Virus record (IMG/VR): IMGVR_UViG_3300027770_000027
Span: 1 to 64,000 of that record
Length of the DNA: 64,000 bases
Reading direction: 5' to 3' (one strand)
Made by a program: the position numbers and the translations under genes
Shown: positions 21,069-64,000 of the stretch, piece after piece
Position numbering within the stretch: the stretch's first letter is position 1
How the letters are laid out: each line of letters starts with the position of its first letter
Notes under the pieces: generated by a model
Database searches by the model: none
What the model saw: the letters and a program-made list of their open reading frames with translations, nothing else
Told to the model about the DNA's origin: nothing

Positions 21069-21482
21069 TTGTTTATGAAAATAAACAAAAACTTGTTTGA
21101 CTTTTTGAAGTCAACATCTGTAGTAATGTTTACCTCCTCTCTTGTGGGGTTATCATTTATCCTTCTAGAAAAACCTTTTTGGCCGGCTTTTATTCTAGCG
21201 GTGTGTACACAGTATATACTCTTTTCCTTTGTTGCAAACCTAATCAATAGTTTCTTAGCAGCTTCTGTTAGACAAAAGGAATTAGATGTTCTAGAACCTC
21301 TTTCATCTATTCTCCAATGTGCAACTTGCTCTGCTTCTAATGTTATTACATTTGTGCCTAATCAAAATGAGAGGGTAGAATTTGTATGTGACAGTCCTAC
21401 ATGTGCTAGTAAGAATGTAGTGAATATTAATTTTACAGTGGCTCGTGTCACAGAATTCAATGATCCTATTGAAATTAAATAA
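21069..21482 (+). CDS. Membrane protein with a C-terminal Zn-ribbon
   Basis: Two hydrophobic helices, then CATC...CDSPTC. Confidence 0.55.
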   Translation: MFMKINKNLFDFLKSTSVVMFTSSLVGLSFILLEKPFWPAFILAVCTQYILFSFVANLINSFLAASVRQKELDVLEPLSSILQCATCSASNVITFVPNQNERVEFVCDSPTCASKNVVNINFTVARVTEFNDPIEIK

Positions 21483-29897: not shown

Positions 29898-30460
29898 TCT
29901 TTAATATCGTATCTATTGCGAATATAAACGGTGGTGGGCATTGCAGAGGGTTCTTTGGCAGGTTTGATCAAGTGCAATCCTGCTTCGATTGGAGTCTTGT
30001 CCCCTTTTTGTGTATTAATGTCTTTATGAGACAATACACAATTAGACCAAGTGGTTTTGCCGCCCCTGGATTTTGGCACAATATGATCAATGTTACCTTC
30101 ATTTGGAGTTAACTTCTTTCCGGAGTATTGACATATGCCACCATCTCGTTCCCAAATATTTTTAGAAGTAAATCTAAGTCGTCTGCGAGGCACCTTATTA
30201 AATTTACACAACACAATTATTTTTGGAATCTTGATATCTCCTCTGACAGTTTTAACATAATCTGAATGAGGATCATGTGGCAATTTAACCCAATCATCCC
30301 ATTTCAAAGGAGTCATATCATCTTCTCCCTCTATATTTAGACCTGTGGCGGCGTCACAGAACATCATTGAAAGAGCATCTAGTGGATTTTTCACATTGAT
30401 GGCTTGCCAGCTCTTGTTTAACACAAGAACACTATTTCTTTCTAGTTTACAATTTTCCAT
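29870..30460 (-). CDS. HNH endonuclease (McrA-like)
   Basis: VLVLNKSW, NIWERDGGICQYSG, NIDHIVPKSRGG, NCVLSH...N..KG. Confidence 0.9.
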   Translation of the reverse strand: MENCKLERNSVLVLNKSWQAINVKNPLDALSMMFCDAATGLNIEGEDDMTPLKWDDWVKLPHDPHSDYVKTVRGDIKIPKIIVLCKFNKVPRRRLRFTSKNIWERDGGICQYSGKKLTPNEGNIDHIVPKSRGGKTTWSNCVLSHKDINTQKGDKTPIEAGLHLIKPAKEPSAMPTTVYIRNRYDIKEWNPFLIAG

Positions 30461-39410: not shown

Positions 39411-39835
39411 TGGTGGAGGCGAGGGGAGTTGAACCCCTGTCCTGAAAACTTAGACTTTAGCGTCTACAATCATATTTTGCTAACATTATAGGGACAAAGG
39501 GTTGTTAGCTAGTTTTTAGTCTACCTGCTGGCGCGAAGTCTACCAGCTACTCTCGGCTTGTTTTTATTGAGCTTCACGATCTTACTCAAACCTACTTAGG
39601 TTACTCCAGAAATTTTAATAGGATCCATTTCTGTTTGTTAGGCTGCGAGCTCGTACATCTCTTCTTCTGCGAGGTAATCCTCGAAGTTGTTGATGATGTG
39701 GGTTGCTTCAGCTAAGAGTGCTTCTGTATTATCAGTTGCATTTATTTGTTTGTCCAGAGATTTTAACGAGGCCAACCAGACTTCCTCGGATTGCAACTAA
39801 AGTTTTCAGCGCTCAGTCGAAACCAATGCGCCCCC
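39411..39835 (-). ncRNA. ssrA: tmRNA
   Basis: 5' GGGGGCG pairs with 3' CGCCUCC-ACCA (G3.U70); GGUUUCGAC; T-arm GGGGUUCAACUCCCC; resume context AUAAAU-GCA; tag ORF 39739-39638 ending LAA*. Confidence 0.95.
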
Positions 39836-50836: not shown

Positions 50837-50913
50837 TGGTGCAATCGGCGGGATTCGAACCCGCGACCAACAGATTAGAAATCTGTTGCTCTATCCAGCT
50901 GAGCTACGATTGC
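50837..50913 (-). tRNA. tRNA-Arg(UCU)
   Basis: GCAATCG...ACAGA-TT-TCT-AA-TCTGT...GGTTCGAATCCC...CGATTGC-ACCA. Confidence 0.95.
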
Positions 50914-50923
50914 TTGTTAAAAA

Positions 50924-50998
50924 TGGAGCGGGTAGAGGGAATTGAACCCTCCTATCTAGTTTGGAAGACTAGGGCATTAGCCACTATGCTATACCCGC
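50924..50998 (-). tRNA. tRNA-Gly(UCC)
   Basis: GCGGGTA...CTAGT-CT-TCC-AA-ACTAG...GGGTTCAATTCCC...TACCCGC-TCCA. Confidence 0.95.
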
Positions 50999-50999
50999 A

Positions 51000-51073
51000 T
51001 GGCACGTCCTGAGGGAATCGAACTCTCATCAACGGTTTTGGAGACCGCAGTTTTACCATTAAACTAAAGACGC
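51000..51073 (-). tRNA. tRNA-Trp(CCA)
   Basis: GCGTCTT...GCGGT-CT-CCA-AA-ACCGT...GAGTTCGATTCCC...AGGACGT-GCCA. Confidence 0.93.
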
Positions 51074-53638: not shown

Positions 53639-53673
53639 GCTATTATTATACCAACTTTTATGGGGAAGTTCAA
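53639..53673 (-). promoter_or_regulatory. TTCCCC-type promoter, predicted leaderless
   Basis: TTGAAC-TTCCCCATAAAAGTTGG-TATAAT-AATAGC-ATG. Confidence 0.8.
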
Positions 53674-53675
53674 AT

Positions 53676-53706
53676 AAAAAAGCCGGTGTCTTTCGACACC
53701 GGCTTT
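53676..53706 (-). terminator. Intrinsic terminator after the beta-barrel gene
   Basis: AAAGCCGGTGTC-GAAA-GACACCGGCTTT plus U-tract. Confidence 0.9.
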
Positions 53707-59765: not shown

Positions 59766-60557
59766 TCAAACTTTAAAAAGCTTCTTTAATTTATACTCAG
59801 CTCTACTAGTTGGTATATTACTTAGATCATCTAATTCTTTTCTAGTGAATGGTGCTGCAGGGGTTGGGATTCCGTCATAGGTTCGAGCAATGTCCGGTAA
59901 GATTTCCTCTTCACAAAATAGACTGCCGGACATATGCCAAACATTCAAAGTCAGGGTCACTGCTTTAATCTTATCTTCCAGACTCTCAGCTCCAAACAAC
60001 AAACGAAAACAATAATCTATTCCCTTATAAGCCTCCGCGGCGATATTGGATAAGTTCACCCGCTCCAGGTCCTCTTCGGCATGTAACAAAAAACGCGGGG
60101 ACTTGGGATTATTAATATAGTCGCCCGTCAAATAATCTATCTTTTGGGAATCCTCAGGCCAGTCCAGTTGAGGCTGCGTGTGCCTCATTAAGCGGCCGGC
60201 AGGCATAGGGGTCACTCCCCTACAATCGAACTCACTTAAAAGAGCCCTTCTCGTTCGTCTTCCGACATGCGCATCCATTATAGTAATAAGATATAATTTA
60301 ATCCATTCATAATGGTTTCTTATTTCTCTATCCACCTGTTGCTTCACTTGGTCCTGTTCGTCTCCATAGTGATAATCGGATAAGAGATATTTCATCATTA
60401 CATATTCATGAAATATATGGAGTCTCTTTAATGCCGTCCCCTTAAACTCTTTTACGATCTTCTGGATAACGGGATAATAACCGCGGTACAAGGGGGACAG
60501 CCGGATAGTGACAAGCAGCTTCTTCCTAAAGGCCATTACATCTGTTGTGGAACTCAT
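59766..60557 (-). CDS. Hypothetical protein
   Basis: 263-aa ORF; LNVWHMSG motif not assigned. Confidence 0.55.
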   Translation of the reverse strand: MSSTTDVMAFRKKLLVTIRLSPLYRGYYPVIQKIVKEFKGTALKRLHIFHEYVMMKYLLSDYHYGDEQDQVKQQVDREIRNHYEWIKLYLITIMDAHVGRRTRRALLSEFDCRGVTPMPAGRLMRHTQPQLDWPEDSQKIDYLTGDYINNPKSPRFLLHAEEDLERVNLSNIAAEAYKGIDYCFRLLFGAESLEDKIKAVTLTLNVWHMSGSLFCEEEILPDIARTYDGIPTPAAPFTRKELDDLSNIPTSRAEYKLKKLFKV

Positions 60558-60762
60558 CTAATACATACCGCGCCAGGTACAGGGGTCTATAGGGTATATA
60601 GGGGGTACTCTTATATAGTAGAACAGCGGATTGCCCCCACCCCCCGGCTCCGGCGTGATACCCCTATTACCTGTTTTTGAACAGCCGGGGTCCTTGCATA
60701 CCACGGTGCGAAAAATCCCCAGAGGTCCCTCTCCGCCCCTGGGGCTTGACTCGCCGCCTATG

Positions 60763-61149
60763 CTACTCGAGGCCGTTCTCCAGGAGGCTGTCGATGAAGC
60801 CGTACTCACATCCTAGGTCGAAGTCGAGGAACCGATTGTCACCAAGGGTCTCCTGGGCCTCGTGGAGCCACCGGATTGCCATCGCAACGTCCTGGGCCCC
60901 ATACTGCATGAGGACTCGGATCTGCTCCCGAGCTGCCTGCTCAGCCCTAGCGGTGCGTTGCTTCTCCTCTTCTACCTGGACATAGTACTCCCGCTCGAGC
61001 CGAGCCAGCATTCCCTTCAGCTCCTGCACCGTGACCTTGGTACCGTAGATCCACCGAGCCTTCACCCCGTAGACGTCCTTGTGGAAGTCACAGTACTCAT
61101 CCATCAGCTGCTCGAGTTCGGTGCGGGCGATCGTCATGTCATTCATCAT
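60763..61149 (-). CDS. Early-type hypothetical protein
   Basis: DFHKDVYGVKAR; own promoter; ATGATG start. Confidence 0.65.
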   Translation of the reverse strand: MMNDMTIARTELEQLMDEYCDFHKDVYGVKARWIYGTKVTVQELKGMLARLEREYYVQVEEEKQRTARAEQAAREQIRVLMQYGAQDVAMAIRWLHEAQETLGDNRFLDFDLGCEYGFIDSLLENGLE

Positions 61150-61187
61150 GTTTATATATTAGAGGAGAGAGTGGGGAACCTCAAGGA

Positions 61188-61412
61188 CTATCGGACCGTT
61201 GCGAGGTCCCAATCGTCGAGTCGGACCACATCCTTATTGGCTAGCTCGACGTCCACTGTGACCCGGTTCACCTTCACCACGGTGCCTGTGTGGCGGATGT
61301 TCTCGGTCTGCCGGCCGTCGAAGAACGTGGTCGTCCAGTTGATCGTCTGGCCGATGGTGAACTGATCCTTGAGGGTGGTCTTGGCGGTGTGCTTCTTAAT
61401 TACTTTCATCAT
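61188..61412 (-). CDS. Small SH3-like early protein, paralogue 1
   Basis: FFDGR...TGTVVKVNRVTVDV. Confidence 0.65.
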   Translation of the reverse strand: MMKVIKKHTAKTTLKDQFTIGQTINWTTTFFDGRQTENIRHTGTVVKVNRVTVDVELANKDVVRLDDWDLATVR

Positions 61413-61450
61413 GTATATATCTTAAGGGTTTATTGGGGGAACTGCAACAC

Positions 61451-61687
61451 TTACCAAGGCCGAGTATTAACCTTCACCTGACGGAGGTCTAGGCGGACTA
61501 CATCCTGGTTCGGCAGGTACACGTCCACGGTGACCTTGTTCATCTTGCACACGGTGCCGGTGTAAGGGACATACTCACCGGTCCGGCCGTCGAAGAAACG
61601 AATTACCCAGTCGACTACCTGTCCGGTGCGGAACTTGGGAAGCTGTTCGGTGTGGCGCTTGATTGTTCTCATTGCTGTTCTCATCAT
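61451..61687 (-). CDS. Small SH3-like early protein, paralogue 2
   Basis: FFDGR...TGTVCKMNKVTVDV. Confidence 0.65.
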   Translation of the reverse strand: MMRTAMRTIKRHTEQLPKFRTGQVVDWVIRFFDGRTGEYVPYTGTVCKMNKVTVDVYLPNQDVVRLDLRQVKVNTRPW

Positions 61688-61725
61688 GTATATATCTTAA
61701 GGGTTTCTGGAGGGAACTGCAAGCA

Positions 61726-62022
61726 CTACCGGTTGATCGTTGTGGTCCTATTCTGCAGGAGGAGGTCGAGCTCCTTCAGCTGCTTGAGGGTCGTGAGGTT
61801 CTCCTTCTGTACCAGCGCCAGGCCTTCCACGAAGTCGGTGTTCAGCCAGTCAGTCTTGAAGGCGAGTCCGTTCACCCCGAAGCCTAGGTGTGTGGTTCCT
61901 TCTTCCTCATCGGTGAGGATACCGAGGACGCGGAAGTCGATGGCCTTCGGGTTCTTGGCTTCGAGCGCCTGGAGGACTGCTACGCGGACTTCGGTCTTGG
62001 TGTTCATCTTGTTTTTCATCAT
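61726..62022 (-). CDS. Early hypothetical protein
   Basis: Own promoter; ATGATG start. Confidence 0.6.
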   Translation of the reverse strand: MMKNKMNTKTEVRVAVLQALEAKNPKAIDFRVLGILTDEEEGTTHLGFGVNGLAFKTDWLNTDFVEGLALVQKENLTTLKQLKELDLLLQNRTTTINR

Positions 62023-62060
62023 GTAATAATATTAACGGACGTTGGGGGGAACTGCAAGGA

Positions 62061-62333
62061 CTACTTCCGAGCTCTGGCCTTCTTGAACTGAGCCCTCACC
62101 TTTGCAAAGGTCTCGTCCTGCTCGGGCTCCGGGTAGAACCAGTTCCAGGTGTTGCGGACTCCCTTGACCAGGAGCTCGAGGAGGCACAGAGGGATGAGGA
62201 TCGGGGAGAGCACCACGGTGAGCAGAGCGGTGACAACGATCGTGGTGATACAGGCGCTCGCTAGTGCGTTGATCGTGGACTGGTGGCGGAGGCGGAAAGC
62301 GAAGGCTTCGGTGGGTGTCATGGTGTCTTTCAT
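62061..62333 (-). CDS. Early membrane protein
   Basis: Long hydrophobic segment; own promoter. Confidence 0.6.
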   Translation of the reverse strand: MKDTMTPTEAFAFRLRHQSTINALASACITTIVVTALLTVVLSPILIPLCLLELLVKGVRNTWNWFYPEPEQDETFAKVRAQFKKARARK

Positions 62334-62375
62334 CTTGTATATATCTTAGGTGAGGAGAGGGGGAACCGCACGGAC

Positions 62376-62468
62376 TTAGTTGAGGTCGAAGAGGTAGATA
62401 AAGGTCGCGCCGAGGCCTACGAGAAGGACGAAGTGAACTGTCACGGCTACTACTTGGAACGTTGTCAT
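62376..62468 (-). CDS. 30-aa single-TM peptide (below ORF-track cutoff)
   Basis: MTTFQVVAVTVHFVLLVGLGATFIYLFDLN; own promoter. Confidence 0.6.
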   Translation of the reverse strand: MTTFQVVAVTVHFVLLVGLGATFIYLFDLN

Positions 62469-62500
62469 TGTTAAGATATTAAAGGATGTACTGGGGAACC

Positions 62501-62695
62501 TCAAGCGAAGACTTCGTGGGCGATCCCGGACTCTGGCTGCTCGTAGGACTCGATGAAGAACCTCTTAGAGTCCTTCCGTTGCCAGATCCACTCCTCCGCG
62601 GACTTCCGATCGAAGAAGACTCCGATGAACTCATTGCCGCCGTTGGAGAAGGCTCCGGCTTCCTTGAACACGATATGGACTTGGGTCTTGGTCAT
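62501..62695 (-). CDS. Early hypothetical protein
   Basis: VHIVF...FIGVFFDRKSAEEW; own promoter. Confidence 0.6.
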   Translation of the reverse strand: MTKTQVHIVFKEAGAFSNGGNEFIGVFFDRKSAEEWIWQRKDSKRFFIESYEQPESGIAHEVFA

Positions 62696-62733
62696 AGTTC
62701 TATTATGGGTTAGGAACTGGGGAAGCTCAACGC

Positions 62734-62898
62734 TTATCGTCCGAGAGCAGGCAGGGGCTTCTGAACAGTCACCCAGTGGAGGATCTCGGTCGGGACTCGG
62801 AACACCTTAGCTGCCTGCTCTGCGTCCTCGCGCTTGGCGTAAGCTCCGAGGAAAGCCTGATTGTCTTCGCGAACGAGAATGTAAACGGTGTCTTTCAT
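62734..62898 (-). CDS. Early hypothetical protein
   Basis: Start MKDTVYILVRED; promoter occupies the ORF-track 5' extension; FLGAYAKREDAEQ. Confidence 0.6.
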   Translation of the reverse strand: MKDTVYILVREDNQAFLGAYAKREDAEQAAKVFRVPTEILHWVTVQKPLPALGR

Positions 62899-62930
62899 TG
62901 TTAATATCTTAGTGGATCTAACGGGGAAGC

Positions 62931-63128
62931 TCAAGCCTCAAGAGCGAGGACGTTGAACGGGACCTGGACTACCTGATTGCTGGGAAGTTCCACGCAGACA
63001 TCCAGCTCGGTGTTCTTCTCCAGGCGAGCGGCCACGGACATGGCCTGCCAGAGAGTCTCGTGGGATGTGTGGATCCGGTAGGGCTTGTTGGGGTAGAGAG
63101 GGGAGCGAGTGAGGACGTTGTAGGTCAT
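62931..63128 (-). CDS. Early hypothetical protein
   Basis: 65-aa ORF co-oriented in the array. Confidence 0.55.
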   Translation of the reverse strand: MTYNVLTRSPLYPNKPYRIHTSHETLWQAMSVAARLEKNTELDVCVELPSNQVVQVPFNVLALEA

Positions 63129-63140
63129 GGTGATTGGGAA

Positions 63141-63242
63141 TTAGAGGTTATGCTTAGCTGCTACGTAGGTCACGAAGACTGCGGCGACTCCGGTGAGAGC
63201 GACTCCGGTGAACATCAGGATGGGAAGGACTGTTTCAATCAT
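63141..63242 (-). CDS. 33-aa single-TM peptide (below ORF-track cutoff)
   Basis: MIETVLPILMFTGVALTGVAAVFVTYVAAKHNL; own promoter. Confidence 0.6.
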   Translation of the reverse strand: MIETVLPILMFTGVALTGVAAVFVTYVAAKHNL

Positions 63243-63281
63243 GTAATAATCTTAGCACATGACTGGGGGAACCTCCCGCCC

Positions 63282-63530
63282 TCAATAGTGCCGTGTCTTT
63301 GACTCTGTCTTGACTCGCTCATACTCTGCTCGCGTCCTCTCGTCTTCCAAAGAGAGGAGTAGCCGGTGGAGTTGGCCTGCAGCAACCTGATAGGCCTTCT
63401 CGGCGGTGTAGGCTTCCCGGCGAAGGGCATTGACGGCATCCAGCTTATCTGTCTTGTGAGCAGAGAGACTGTCCAGGAGGTCGAGTTGTTGGCGGACGCC
63501 GGGGTTATTGAGGATGTCTTGGTTATTCAT
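63282..63530 (-). CDS. Early coiled-coil protein
   Basis: 82-aa helical ORF. Confidence 0.55.
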   Translation of the reverse strand: MNNQDILNNPGVRQQLDLLDSLSAHKTDKLDAVNALRREAYTAEKAYQVAAGQLHRLLLSLEDERTRAEYERVKTESKTRHY

Positions 63531-63554
63531 AGATTTATTGGTTGTGGGGAAAGA

Positions 63555-63731
63555 TTAGTGGCGGTTCCGGGGATTGATTCCCTTCCCGGCGTTCTCCTGC
63601 CGGTGGATGATGACCCCGGCGATCACGAAGAGGACAATCACAGGCCAGAAGTTCACGGCGAGCTTGAGGAAGACCTGGCCAATGAGGGAAAGCTTGTCTG
63701 TGAGGGTCATGTCGAAGTGTTCTTGAATCAT
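63555..63731 (-). CDS. 58-aa membrane peptide (below ORF-track cutoff)
   Basis: MIQEHFDMTLTDKLSLIGQVFLKLAVNFWPVIVLFVIAGVIIHRQ...; CATAAT 6 nt upstream. Confidence 0.6.
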   Translation of the reverse strand: MIQEHFDMTLTDKLSLIGQVFLKLAVNFWPVIVLFVIAGVIIHRQENAGKGINPRNRH

Positions 63732-63788
63732 GTTTCTATTATGGCTGGGAATGCTGGGAAGGGAACGGCTGACTTTAACATTGAGGTC

Positions 63789-63971
63789 CTACTTGCACAG
63801 GCAGTAGACTCCGAAGAGGGCCAGCCCTCCCACGATGAGGCCGTGGTTCCCCAGGAACGCGAGACATAGGGTTCCCAGGGCGGTTCCGGCCATCGCCATT
63901 CCTAGGAAGGCGGACGGGCATAGGAACCAGAGGGCTGCGAGAACGGCGAGGAACATCATTACTTTCATCAT
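63789..63971 (-). CDS. 60-aa hydrophobic membrane protein
   Basis: Almost entirely hydrophobic; own promoter; ATGATG start. Confidence 0.6.
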   Translation of the reverse strand: MMKVMMFLAVLAALWFLCPSAFLGMAMAGTALGTLCLAFLGNHGLIVGGLALFGVYCLCK

Positions 63972-64000
63972 GTATATATCTTACAGGACTTGAGGGGGAA

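What the first reader, a model, noticed from the sequence alone, without database searches (positions are those of the whole stretch)
60560..64000. Abrupt GC-rich block that shares regulatory grammar with the AT-rich genome
Seen: spot counts of 60-nt lines give about 53-62% GC here versus about 18-43% in sampled upstream lines. The same TTCCC promoter precedes AT-rich genes at 30460, 47411, 50132, 53638, 54509 and 55577, which argues against a chimeric assembly or a recent foreign island. Known: T5 and SPO1 keep host-takeover genes in a first-injected/terminal region. Inference: a first-expressed host-takeover region whose composition is adapted to the host.
Basis: partly seen in the sequence, partly recalled or inferred. 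Interest (0 to 1): 0.6.

Follow-up and report, generated by a model that had tools for sequence, protein, structure and literature searches.

The report
Host-dialect early gene island in phage
A 5-kb GC-rich stretch in an AT-rich freshwater T4-like giant phage is a native array of tiny genes, each with its own promoter touching the start codon, rewritten in the codon style of the likely GC-rich host; it is an unusually extreme case of early genes using different codons from late genes.

Summary
GC jumps from about 36% to 51-62% at 60,560 and stays high to about 65,520, which is 1.5 kb past the window end. The block is not rRNA, not a chimera and not a recent import. Contigs from two independent studies bridge the left junction, and relatives carry the same island.

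It is a bounded array of 17 tiny minus-strand genes, 13 of them in the window. Fifteen have their own promoter (TTGnnn-TTCCCC-N11-TAnnAT-N6-ATG) that fills the roughly 38-nt gap and places the A of the ATG at the expected +1, implying leaderless mRNA. One terminator closes the array.

The shift is mainly synonymous: GC3 is 0.7-0.83, against a genome median of 0.26, and codon use is inverted. Island genes fit the codon usage of the probable host lineage (Verrucomicrobiota, inferred from a tmRNA and an auxiliary gene): CAI-like 0.63, against 0.38 for the phage bulk and 0.70 for the candidate's own genes. Orthologues in a sister lineage are AT-rich, and GC3 persists despite heavy synonymous turnover, so the state is maintained.

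The best reading is host-RNAP early cassettes written in host dialect. The T5/SPO1 terminal, first-injected analogy is unsupported. Timing and protein function remain inferred.

The parts
60558..60762 (-). Non-coding tail of the island, 57% GC. It contains the closing terminator and the region upstream of the next, AT-rich 263-aa gene.
   Evidence: GC 0.57. No significant overall fold, z = -0.2. Tandem GGGTATATA x2.3 at 60583-60603.
60720..60748 (-). Intrinsic-terminator-like hairpin plus U-run. It is the only terminator-like site downstream of the island genes.
   Evidence: Terminator scan hit at L010 735-720 on the minus strand. The hairpin CCCCAGGGG...CCUCUGGGG followed by AUUUUU appears in the MFE fold. 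The homologous segment is conserved in L091 and L094.
60763..61149 (-). Gene 1, 128 aa, the last gene in the transcription direction. All-helical, phage-only family. Its own promoter lies at 61150-61187.
   Evidence: GC3 0.80. 39 homologues at 51-91% identity, all metagenomic. phrog_21968, function unknown. AF2 pLDDT 92 with no PDB match. Atlas neighbours are viral clusters.
61188..61412 (-). Gene 2, 74 aa, paralogue of gene 3. Promoter at 61413-61450.
   Evidence: GC3 0.82. 52% identical to the 78-aa neighbour. Promoter shown.
61451..61687 (-). Gene 3, 78 aa, paralogue of gene 2. Promoter at 61688-61725.
   Evidence: GC3 0.71..
61726..62022 (-). Gene 4, 98 aa. Promoter at 62023-62060.
   Evidence: GC3 0.82. 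Weak homologues in L091, L092 and L094.
62061..62333 (-). Gene 5, 90 aa, with a hydrophobic segment. Promoter at 62334-62375.
   Evidence: GC3 0.82. 83% identical orthologue in L091. Sequence.
62376..62468 (-). Gene 6, a 30-aa hydrophobic peptide. Promoter at 62469-62500.
   Evidence: GC3 0.70. Promoter.
62501..62695 (-). Gene 7, 64 aa. Promoter at 62696-62733, with CATAAT as the -10 box.
   Evidence: GC3 0.81. The orthologue in AT-rich L096 has GC3 0.41 at 62% aa identity. Weak DUF7336 hit.
62734..62898 (-). Gene 8, 54 aa. Promoter at 62899-62930.
   Evidence: GC3 0.65. Promoter.
62931..63128 (-). Gene 9, 65 aa. It has no standard promoter of its own (12-nt gap) and is probably co-transcribed with gene 10.
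   Evidence: GC3 0.80. Orthologues in L091, L094 and L095. Upstream sequence.
63141..63242 (-). Gene 10, a 33-aa hydrophobic peptide. Promoter at 63243-63281.
63282..63530 (-). Gene 11, 82 aa. It has a non-standard short upstream gap of 24 nt.
   Evidence: GC3 0.63. Upstream sequence.
63555..63731 (-). Gene 12, 58 aa, with a hydrophobic segment. The promoter lies within 63732-63788, with CATAAT as the -10 box.
   Evidence: GC3 0.83. Orthologues in L091, L092, L094 and L095.
63789..63971 (-). Gene 13, 60 aa, with two hydrophobic segments. The promoter starts at 63972 and runs off the window end. Four more island genes follow at contig positions 64072-65478.
   Evidence: GC3 0.78. Promoter. Continuation.
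50837..51073 (-). Phage tRNA cluster: Arg(TCT), Gly(TCC) and Trp(CCA). These tRNAs read the AT-rich codons used heavily by the phage bulk, little by the candidate host lineage and, for AGA, little by the island.
   Evidence: ARAGORN and Rfam. AGA is 1% of Arg codons in G006, 6% in the island and 46% in the bulk. GGA is 13%, 33% and 43% of Gly codons.
53639..53680 (-). Example of the same TTCCCC promoter in front of an AT-rich gene. Other in-window sites lie upstream of the ATGs at 21075(+), 30460, 37075, 47411, 49067, 50132, 54509 and 55577.

Best explanation
The block is a native, bounded array of promoter-plus-gene cassettes in the hyperplastic early region of a 227-kb freshwater T4-like myovirus. 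It holds 17 tiny genes, 13 of them in the window. Fifteen carry their own sigma-70-type promoter, and in the commonest form that promoter fills the whole 38-nt gap between genes. The promoter reads: -35 TTGnnn, a 17-nt spacer beginning with an invariant TTCCC(C), -10 TAnnAT, 6 nt, then ATG. This places the A of the start codon at the expected +1, so each gene would be the 5'-terminal cistron of its own leaderless mRNA. All transcripts would run to one terminator at about 60,720-60,748. The promoters have a -35 element and the phage has no sigma factor with region 4, so they are probably read by unmodified host RNA polymerase early in infection (inferred). The genes are old phage genes that have been recoded into a GC3-rich, C-ending codon dialect matching the probable GC-rich host, a Verrucomicrobiota lineage of the Chthoniobacterales type (inferred). 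The host's own tRNA pool could therefore translate them efficiently before the phage's tRNAs (Arg-TCT, Gly-TCC) and other translation factors appear. The rest of the genome uses an AT-rich dialect. The repeated promoter units also act as homology points for swapping cassettes between related phages. The anatomy, the native origin, the codon inversion, the maintenance of the GC-rich state and the cassette-wise mosaicism are shown. The timing, the 5' ends, the host identity and the selective cause are inferred.
For: Composition. GC3 is 0.70-0.83 in the island, against a genome median of 0.26, with GC2 alike. Codon use is inverted: AGA .46->.06, TTA+TTG .59->.02, CTC .05->.52, ATC .14->.78, TTC .19->.93, AAG .27->.83. 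The RSCU correlation between island and bulk is -0.10.

Promoter. There are 48 sites against 1.8 +/- 1.6 in shuffles. The TTCCC to -10 gap is 12 nt in 43/48 sites, and the first ATG lies 6 nt after the -10 box in 38/48. Of motif genes, 47% start ATGATG, against 0% of other genes. No sigma region 4 gene was found. Late-type WATAAATA and TAAGTAT motifs without a -35 element precede the large structural genes.

Bounds. A terminator-like hairpin lies at 60720-60748, another lies upstream at about 65,804-65,820, and none lies between the island genes.

Native origin. Contigs cross the junctions without mismatch in two studies. The same island and motif occur in L091, L094, L095 and L201.

Old phage genes, maintained state. 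The 128-aa orthologues have GC3 of 0.72-0.88 in seven GC-rich loci but 0.29 in L096/L097. The 64-aa family has 0.81 against 0.41, and the 215-aa family 0.56 against 0.27. Four-fold site identity is only 0.40-0.68, against 0.30-0.34 at saturation, yet GC3 stays high. Structural neighbours are viral only.

Host. The DUF1501 auxiliary gene is closest to Chthoniobacteraceae (63%) and Opitutae (54-55%). The tmRNA matches at E <= 1e-8 in 12/201 Verrucomicrobiota and 0/201 each of Planctomycetota, Actinomycetota and Bacteroidota. The G006 sample has GC .62, GC3 .73 and CTC > CTG. The CAI-like index is .63 for the island.38 for the bulk and .70 for G006's own ORFs.

Cassette exchange. blastn homology with relatives is gene-wise and ends at promoter units.

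Clade trend. G002 (median GC3 .20) has a 17-kb small-gene region with GC3 .4-.7 behind TTGACA-N17-TAnnnT promoters.
Against: Non-coding DNA in the island is also GC-shifted. Promoter spacers are .53 GC against .36 elsewhere (rho .67), and the tail is 57% GC. Amino-acid usage also shifts: Arg and Ala go up, Ile, Asn and Ser go down. Pure codon-tRNA selection does not predict either effect. Many genes behind the same promoter are AT-rich, with GC3 .3-.45, so early transcription alone does not require GC-richness. The invariant TTCCCC is absent from five candidate-host genomes. It is therefore a phage-specific element, and its position 12 nt upstream of the -10 box resembles a T4 MotA box, which would make these middle rather than immediate-early promoters. 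The host is inferred from only two markers, and Pseudomonadota and Cyanobacteriota were not sampled for the tmRNA. No 5'-end or time-course data exist. The RNA-library evidence consists of contigs only.
Confidence: 0.55

Rival explanations
1. A regional DNA-level bias drives the GC shift, not translation. The repeated promoter units make the island a recombination hot spot between co-infecting relatives, and GC-biased repair or gene conversion (or another local mutational bias) pushes every unconstrained site towards GC. The resemblance to host codons is a by-product.
For: Non-coding spacers and the 205-nt tail are GC-rich too, and spacer GC tracks downstream GC3. Amino-acid composition shifts towards GC-rich codons. 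Homology with relatives breaks at promoter units, and gene content is mosaic. Assemblies also break at these repeats.
Against: The same promoter repeats flank many AT-rich genes at 68-100 kb without GC enrichment. The island's specific codon choices (CTC > CTG, ATC, TTC, avoidance of AGA, TTA and ATA) match the candidate host in detail, with a CAI-like index of .63 against the host's own .70. GC-biased conversion has not been established in phages (own knowledge).
Confidence: 0.2
2. Selection acts on the nucleic acid itself. GC-rich DNA or RNA lets the first-expressed genes escape host factors that target AT-rich foreign DNA or AU-rich RNA, such as xenogeneic silencers, nucleoid proteins or AU-preferring RNases, until phage counter-measures are made.
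For: The shift covers non-coding DNA, and only the -10 box and discriminator stay AT-rich. The island is a sharply bounded transcription unit. The pattern recurs more weakly in G002.
Against: No silencer is known or tested for the inferred host. Other genes with the same promoter are AT-rich. No restriction-palindrome avoidance distinguishes the island.
Confidence: 0.1
3. The TTCCCC promoters are middle-class promoters activated by a phage factor (MotA-like sigma appropriation), so the island is delayed-early or middle rather than first-expressed.
For: TTCCCC is invariant while the TTG part of the -35 box is only 50-90% conserved. It sits 12 nt from the -10 box, as Mot boxes do (PMC4122927 describes Mot-box cassettes, PmSLs). 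It is absent from candidate host genomes. Relatives use a different spacer element, TGTCCAC, on the same skeleton.
Against: The G at -33 is 90% conserved and the 17-nt spacing is canonical for host sigma-70. No MotA, MotCF or AsiA homologue was found, although there was no positive control. G002 uses plain TTGACA promoters for its analogous region.
Confidence: 0.2
4. The island is a recent horizontal import from the GC-rich host or from a GC-rich phage and has not yet ameliorated.
For: The compositional boundary is abrupt. The dinucleotide signature distance to the bulk (109) is about 2 sd above the phage's own windows.
Against: Orthologues exist across the clade, including AT-rich versions. 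GC3 is retained despite near-saturated synonymous divergence. All homologues and structural neighbours are viral or metagenomic, and none is bacterial. The promoters are the phage's own. The signature is closer to the phage bulk than to candidate bacterial loci.
Confidence: 0.04
5. The block is an assembly chimera.
For: Short-read contigs break inside the island at the promoter repeats.
Against: Error-free contigs cross the left junction in two independent studies and the right junction in one. Five independent assemblies of relatives show the same AT-to-GC transitions.
Confidence: 0.01

Closest known systems
PeSL (promoter-early stem-loop) cassettes of T4-like phages (Arbiol 2010, PMC2839356; Comeau 2014, PMC4122927)
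   Same: Both are repeated sigma-70-type early promoters (TTGnnn-N17-TAnnAT) placed between small ORFan genes in hyperplastic regions of T4-like myoviruses. In both, homology with relatives breaks at the units, giving cassette gain, loss and replacement.
   Different: There is no stem-loop or terminator half: the 38-nt gap is filled entirely by the promoter. The promoter abuts the ATG, giving leaderless geometry. There is an extra invariant TTCCCC spacer element. The cassettes carry a codon dialect opposite to the rest of the genome, which has not been described for PeSLs.
Early versus late codon-usage differences in phages (Mioduser et al. 2017, PMC5683454; T4 early/late codon classes, Cowe & Sharp 1991, from memory)
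   Same: A subset of putatively early genes uses synonymous codons closer to the host tRNA pool than late genes do.
   Different: The magnitude and geometry differ. This is a sharp 5-kb island with GC3 about 0.8 against 0.26 and a negative RSCU correlation with the bulk, conserved across a clade, rather than a statistical tendency. Only part of the promoter class is recoded.
Low-GC genome plus phage tRNAs strategy of T4-like cyanomyoviruses (Limor-Waisberg 2011, PMC3152331)
   Same: Both are AT-rich myoviruses infecting a GC-rich host and carrying tRNAs with T-starting anticodons for AT-rich codons. Here these are Arg-TCT and Gly-TCC.
   Different: That model treats the genome as uniformly low-GC. 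Here the phage combines both strategies in one genome: a host-matched island and a tRNA-supplemented bulk.
T5 pre-early (first-step-transfer) region and SPO1 host-takeover module
   Same: All are clusters of many very small genes of unknown function behind strong host-type promoters.
   Different: No terminal-repeat location was found. The phage is T4-like. There is no sequence homology to those modules. Function and timing are untested.
Leaderless transcription units of Thermus phage phiYS40 (Sevostyanova 2007, from memory)
   Same: Both are AT-rich myoviruses of GC-rich hosts that rely on host RNAP, with promoters placed so that transcripts begin at the AUG.
   Different: As recalled from memory, the leaderless class in phiYS40 is the middle/late one and lacks a -35 element. 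Here all classes abut the ATG, and the class with a -35 element carries the GC-rich island. The two phages are unrelated lineages.

Membership tests
PeSL mobile regulatory cassettes (T4-like phages) | Sigma-70-type early promoter with about 17-nt spacing | tested here: met
   TTGnnn, 17 nt, TAnnAT. The TTCCC to -10 gap is 12 nt in 43/48 sites.
PeSL mobile regulatory cassettes (T4-like phages) | Adjoining stem-loop or terminator forming a composite unit | tested here: not met
   The intergenic gap is 38 nt in 7 of 16 cases and is filled by the promoter. No terminator-like hairpin lies between island genes.
PeSL mobile regulatory cassettes (T4-like phages) | Clustered in hyperplastic regions next to ORFans, and coinciding with indel or replacement breakpoints between relatives | tested here: met
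   The 58-110 kb region consists of small genes. blastn matches to L091, L094, L095 and L201 end at promoter units, and cassettes are inserted or replaced.
Leaderless mRNA genes | Transcription start at the A of the start codon | not testable with these tools
   Geometry only: the ATG lies 6 nt after the -10 hexamer in 38/48 sites. Only contigs, not raw reads, were available for the RNA library.
T4 middle (MotA/AsiA) promoters | Mot box (TGCTT) at about -30 plus MotA and AsiA genes | tested here: inconclusive
   The box position is similar but the sequence is TTCCCC, not TGCTT. There were no hits to PF09114, PF09158 or PF09010, but the controls also gave nothing.
T5 pre-early / SPO1 host-takeover terminal module | Location in a terminal repeat or first-entering end of the genome | tested here: not met
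   The island lies at 60.5-65.5 kb of 227 kb, and no terminal repeat is present in the contig. The physical genome ends are unknown.
T5 pre-early / SPO1 host-takeover terminal module | Homology to known takeover genes | tested here: not met
   No significant Pfam or PHROG function was found for any island protein.
Horizontally acquired genomic island | Absent from relatives, donor-like homologues present, composition decaying towards the recipient | tested here: not met
   The island is present in relatives. Homologues are viral or metagenomic only. GC3 is maintained despite synonymous turnover.
T4-like myovirus | Gp23-type capsid, contractile sheath, T4-type replication genes | tested here: met
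   PF07068 at 299 bits, sheath, baseplate, PolB, DnaB-like helicase, RNR and RNA ligase. The capsid is only about 35% identical to cyanomyoviruses.

The most novel reading that the evidence does not exclude
The phage genome is deliberately 'bilingual', and the codon dialect is itself a timing device. Early cassettes are written in the host's dialect so that they are translated at once. They are then switched off automatically, together with host genes, when the phage reshapes the translation apparatus with its own tRNAs and tmRNA and through possible loss of host tRNAs or mRNAs, in favour of its AT-rich dialect. This would be a built-in translational early-to-late switch in a system where nearly every gene, early and late, starts at or next to the 5' end of its mRNA and Shine-Dalgarno sites are rare.
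Probability: 0.15. Interest if true: 0.85.

Novelty: new variant of a known kind. Interest (0 to 1): 0.62.

Why it matters
Differences in codon usage between early and late phage genes are known as weak statistical trends. Here the contrast is nearly binary, sharply bounded, conserved across an uncultured freshwater phage clade, and attached to a one-promoter-per-gene leaderless architecture.

If the host-dialect reading holds, it would show that one virus can combine two strategies previously assigned to different phage families. One is matching the host's composition. The other is keeping a low-GC genome and importing tRNAs.

The island is also a compact natural test bed of 17 tiny genes. 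It could be used to ask how codon choice, leaderless initiation and infection timing interact, and to separate translational selection from biased recombination in phage genome evolution. It also gives a sequence-only marker for finding early regions, and for guessing host GC, in uncultured AT-rich jumbo phages.

Tried and rejected
- rRNA or other structured RNA as the cause of the GC-rich, ORF-poor look: there are no Rfam hits in 58-64 kb, and the tail has no significant fold.
- Alternative genetic code: not needed, because the minus-strand ORFs are open in table 11 with strong GC3 periodicity.
- megablast against annotated phages: no match for the island, and only a tRNA match for the flank.
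- Functional annotation of island proteins: Pfam and PHROGs gave nothing usable.
- Structure of the 128-aa protein: the model is confident, but neither Foldseek PDB nor the Atlas gives a function.
- More distant complete relatives G001-G005: they lack the 128-aa gene.
- G004: it shows only small GC blips and no TTCCC motif.
- Restriction-palindrome avoidance: no difference between island and bulk.
- Dinucleotide signature: ambiguous.
- Shine-Dalgarno contrast between motif and non-motif genes: uninformative, because SD is rare genome-wide at 7%.
- Search for the promoter grammar in candidate host genomes: none found.
- Search for the promoter grammar in IMG/VR: one other contig.
- The 'moraphage' paper (PMC12619734) and a lake Hi-C preprint: neither concerns this clade.
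- A cyanobacterial host: no psbA/psbD was found.
- RNA-library depth over the island relative to its flanks: it looks higher, but the tool warns that contig depth cannot rank genes, so it was not used as evidence.
- The phylum search centred on L174, labelled Alcaligenaceae: it drew the same genome set as Planctomycetota, so Pseudomonadota were not sampled.
- The large representative-protein search was not run. The claim does not rest on absence of relatives.

Full report
OBSERVATION. The window is the first 64 kb of a single 227,352-bp viral contig with 36.4% GC. GC rises abruptly at about 60,560 to 0.49-0.625 in 200-bp windows. It stays high to the window end and beyond, to about 65,520-65,600. 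Five of the six 1-kb windows with GC >= 0.50 in the whole contig lie in this block.

WHAT IT IS NOT. The lack of long ORFs suggested rRNA, but Rfam finds nothing in 58-64 kb. It is not a chimera. In the probable source run, a 10.5-kb contig covers 60,001-61,425 without mismatch. In an independent lake metatranscriptome study, a 985-nt contig covers 60,441-61,425. A 5.4-kb contig crosses the right edge. Contigs break only at the repeated promoter units. It is not a recent import, for the reasons given below under 'Native, old and maintained'.

ANATOMY. The block is densely coding on the minus strand. It has 13 genes of 30-128 aa in the window and four more up to 65,478. Five products are short hydrophobic peptides, and two (74 and 78 aa) are paralogues.

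Fifteen of the 17 genes are preceded by one composite unit: cTTGnnnTTCCCC, 11 nt, TAnnAT (mostly TAAGAT), 6 nt, then ATG, often as ATGATG. Two of these use CATAAT as the -10 box.

Genome-wide there are 48 such sites, 45 of them on the minus strand, against 1.8 +/- 1.6 in shuffles. The TTCCC to -10 gap is exactly 12 nt in 43/48 sites. This makes a canonical 17-nt spacer from the TTG, whose G is 90% conserved. The first ATG lies exactly 6 nt after the -10 hexamer in 38/48 sites, which puts the A of the start codon at the expected transcription start.

The commonest intergenic gap is 38 nt (7 of 16 gaps), and the promoter fills all of it. A terminator-like hairpin with a U-run at 60,720-60,748 follows the last gene. 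Another lies just upstream of the first promoter, at about 65,804-65,820. None lies between the island genes. The inferred picture is a nested set of 3'-coterminal transcripts, each beginning with its own AUG.

THE PHAGE. It has a Gp23-type capsid, sheath, baseplate, tail fibres, RNR, PolB, a DnaB-like helicase and an RNA ligase. That makes it a T4-like jumbo myovirus. Its capsid is only about 35% identical to cyanomyoviruses. About 600 uncultured relatives exist in IMG/VR, and the runs holding it are freshwater or lake metagenomes.

Genes without the TTCCCC unit are enriched for T4-late-like WATAAATA (30 observed, 3.1 expected) and for TAAGTAT (16 observed, 0.9 expected). These motifs also end 4-10 nt before the ATG of large structural genes. 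SD-like sequences are rare everywhere, at 7%. Promoter-abutting starts are therefore a genome-wide habit, and the TTCCCC class is the one with a -35 element. The phage encodes no sigma factor with region 4. This points to host primary sigma, and so to an early class (inference).

COMPOSITION. GC3 is 0.70-0.83 in most island genes and 0.56-0.65 in four. The genome median is 0.26, and GC2 is similar in island and bulk. Codon use is inverted: Arg AGA .46->.06, Leu TTA+TTG .59->.02, CTC .05->.52, Ile ATC .14->.78, Phe TTC .19->.93, Lys AAG .27->.83. Four-fold sites are C .46, G .22 in the island and C .15, G .09 in the bulk. The RSCU correlation between island and bulk is -0.10.

The shift is not purely synonymous. 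Promoter spacers are 53% GC in the island against 36% elsewhere, and spacer GC tracks downstream GC3 (rho 0.67). The non-coding tail is 57% GC. Amino-acid use also drifts towards GC-rich codons. Genes with the promoter have higher GC3 overall (median .37 against .25, p = 7e-12), but many are AT-rich. Smaller GC-rich patches with the same promoters lie at 70.0-71.2 kb and 74.6-75.9 kb.

NATIVE, OLD AND MAINTAINED. The 128-aa gene has 39 homologues at 51-91% identity. All are metagenomic, and several sit on 190-230-kb contigs. In L091, L092, L094, L095, L201, L202 and L203 the orthologue has GC3 of 0.72-0.88 and sits in a 2.5 to >6-kb GC-rich island within AT-rich flanks. In L096/L097 (52% identity) it has GC3 of 0.29, lies in ordinary AT-rich DNA, and sits behind a promoter that leaves a leader of about 20 nt. 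The 64-aa family shows 0.81 against 0.41, and the 215-aa family 0.56 against 0.27.

Between GC-rich orthologues, identity at four-fold sites is only 0.40-0.68, where 0.30-0.34 is expected at saturation. Even so, GC3 stays high in each lineage. A persistent force therefore maintains the state, and it is not a fading import.

The 128-aa protein folds confidently (pLDDT 92) as an all-helical protein. It has no PDB match, and its Atlas neighbours are phage-only clusters. The dinucleotide signature distance from island to bulk is 109. The phage's own windows give 59 +/- 22 (maximum 129), and candidate bacterial loci give 125-231.

REGULATORY DIALECTS AND CASSETTE EXCHANGE. L092, L202 and L203 keep the skeleton (TTGnnn, 17 nt, TAnnnT, 6 nt, ATG) but replace TTCCCC with TGTCCAC. 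G002 (211 kb, median GC3 0.20) has a 17-kb small-gene region with GC3 of 0.4-0.7 behind A-tract plus TTGACA-N17-TAnnnT promoters. The exact TTCCCC grammar is absent from five candidate host genomes and is found in one other IMG/VR contig, so TTCCCC is a phage-lineage element.

blastn shows that homology with relatives is cassette-wise and ends at promoter units, and that promoter units cross-match one another. L094 has about 1.9 kb of extra cassettes between the 128-aa gene and the shared terminator region. This matches the behaviour of PeSL cassettes in T4-like phages (PMC2839356, PMC4122927), except that the defining stem-loop is missing.

HOST. The phage carries two tandem DUF1501 genes. 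Apart from a probably mis-binned contig, their closest cellular homologues are Chthoniobacteraceae (63%), Opitutae and other Verrucomicrobiota (54-55%), and then Planctomycetota (about 46%).

The phage also encodes a full-length tmRNA (Rfam 132.6 bits). It matches at E <= 1e-8 in 12/201 Verrucomicrobiota, including the same Chthoniobacteraceae MAG. It matches in 0/201 Planctomycetota, 0/201 Actinomycetota and 0/201 Bacteroidota. No photosystem gene is present.

A 69-kb sample of that MAG has GC 0.62 and GC3 0.73 and, like the island, prefers CTC to CTG. On a CAI-like index built from the MAG's codon usage, island genes score 0.63 (range 0.52-0.78), the phage bulk 0.38, and the MAG's own ORFs 0.70. 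AGA is 1% of Arg codons in the MAG, 6% in the island and 46% in the bulk. GGA is 13%, 33% and 43% of Gly codons. These two codons are the ones read by the phage tRNAs Arg(TCT) and Gly(TCC). The host assignment remains an inference from two markers.

INTERPRETATION. The best-supported reading is a native early-gene cassette array, transcribed by host RNA polymerase as leaderless mRNAs and written in the host's codon dialect. The bulk of the genome relies on an AT-rich dialect supplemented by phage tRNAs.

This extends two known ideas. One is the codon difference between early and late phage genes (PMC5683454). The other is the low-GC-plus-tRNA strategy of cyanomyoviruses (PMC3152331). The extension is to an almost binary, sharply bounded form.

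The GC shift in non-coding DNA, and the AT-rich genes behind the same promoter, keep two rivals open. One is a regional recombination or biased-conversion effect. The other is selection on the DNA or RNA itself. The TTCCCC box also leaves open a MotA-like middle-class mechanism, for which no MotA/AsiA homologue was found, though without a positive control.

The island is internal to a T4-like genome, and no terminal repeat was detected. Its proteins have no known function.

LIMITS. There are no 5'-end, time-course or host-linkage data. The RNA evidence consists of contigs only. My gene calls are simple ORF calls guided by the promoter motif and GC3 periodicity.

Noticed in passing
window 39411-39835 (-): A full-length phage-encoded tmRNA (Rfam RF00023, 132.6 bits, E = 1e-51). 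ARAGORN predicts an unusually long 33-residue tag ending in ...YELAA. I used it as a host clue: it matches Verrucomicrobiota best.
   Followed up: partly
window 50837-51073 (-): A cluster of three tRNAs: Arg(TCT), Gly(TCC) and Trp(CCA). AGA and GGA are common in the phage bulk and rare in the candidate host lineage.
   Followed up: partly
contig 180306-181670 and 181677-182936 (-) (L006): Two tandem DUF1501 auxiliary genes (449 and 372 bits). The closest cellular homologues are in Chthoniobacteraceae and Opitutae. Their role in the phage is unknown.
   Followed up: partly
genome-wide, e.g. upstream of contig 126113, 133544, 144266, 11131: Late-type motifs WATAAATA and TAAGTAT end 4-10 nt before the ATG of large structural genes, and Shine-Dalgarno-like sequences are rare (7%). 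Near-leaderless starts appear to be the rule for the whole phage.
   Followed up: partly
contig 70000-71200 and 74600-75900 (L001): Two smaller GC-rich patches (GC 0.48-0.59) carry the same TTCCCC-TAAGAT-ATGATG promoters. My greedy ORF caller picked plus-strand ORFs there, but the motif indicates minus-strand genes.
   Followed up: no
L092 3200-3260, L202 3290-3345, L203 330-385: A second promoter dialect occurs in relatives: TTGcCC-TGTCCAC ... TAnnnT, 6 nt, ATG. It has the same skeleton and leaderless geometry but a different spacer-proximal element.
   Followed up: partly
G002 (L100-L101), 40-57 kb of a 211,587-bp relative: A 17-kb small-gene region has GC 40-49% and GC3 0.4-0.7 in a 32% GC genome, behind A-tract plus TTGACA promoters. 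It is a milder version of the same phenomenon. The contig ends overlap by 143 nt, consistent with a circular or permuted assembly.
   Followed up: partly
window 60583-60603 and 60558-60620 (-): A tandem GGGTATATA motif and several TATA(G/T) repeats lie just upstream of the AT-rich 263-aa gene (59766-60557). They may be a different promoter type.
   Followed up: no
L010 1-6000 in run X2 (lake metatranscriptome): Summed contig depth is about 15-32 over the island, against 0-12 on both flanks, while the DNA run is flat. This hints at higher RNA representation, but the tool warns that contig depth cannot rank genes.
   Followed up: no
L121 (CAYOWH010000027.1) and L174 (CAZVZK010000197.1): A 'Bacteriovoracaceae' MAG contig carries a DUF1501 gene 77% identical to the phage's at its very end, so it is probably a mis-binned phage fragment. 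The genome behind a locus labelled 'Alcaligenaceae' was grouped with Planctomycetota by the genome tool.
   Followed up: no
L096 1544-2044: The AT-rich sister lineage encodes a small sigma-70-family (ECF-like) factor that the window's phage lacks. This may relate to its different promoter grammar.
   Followed up: partly
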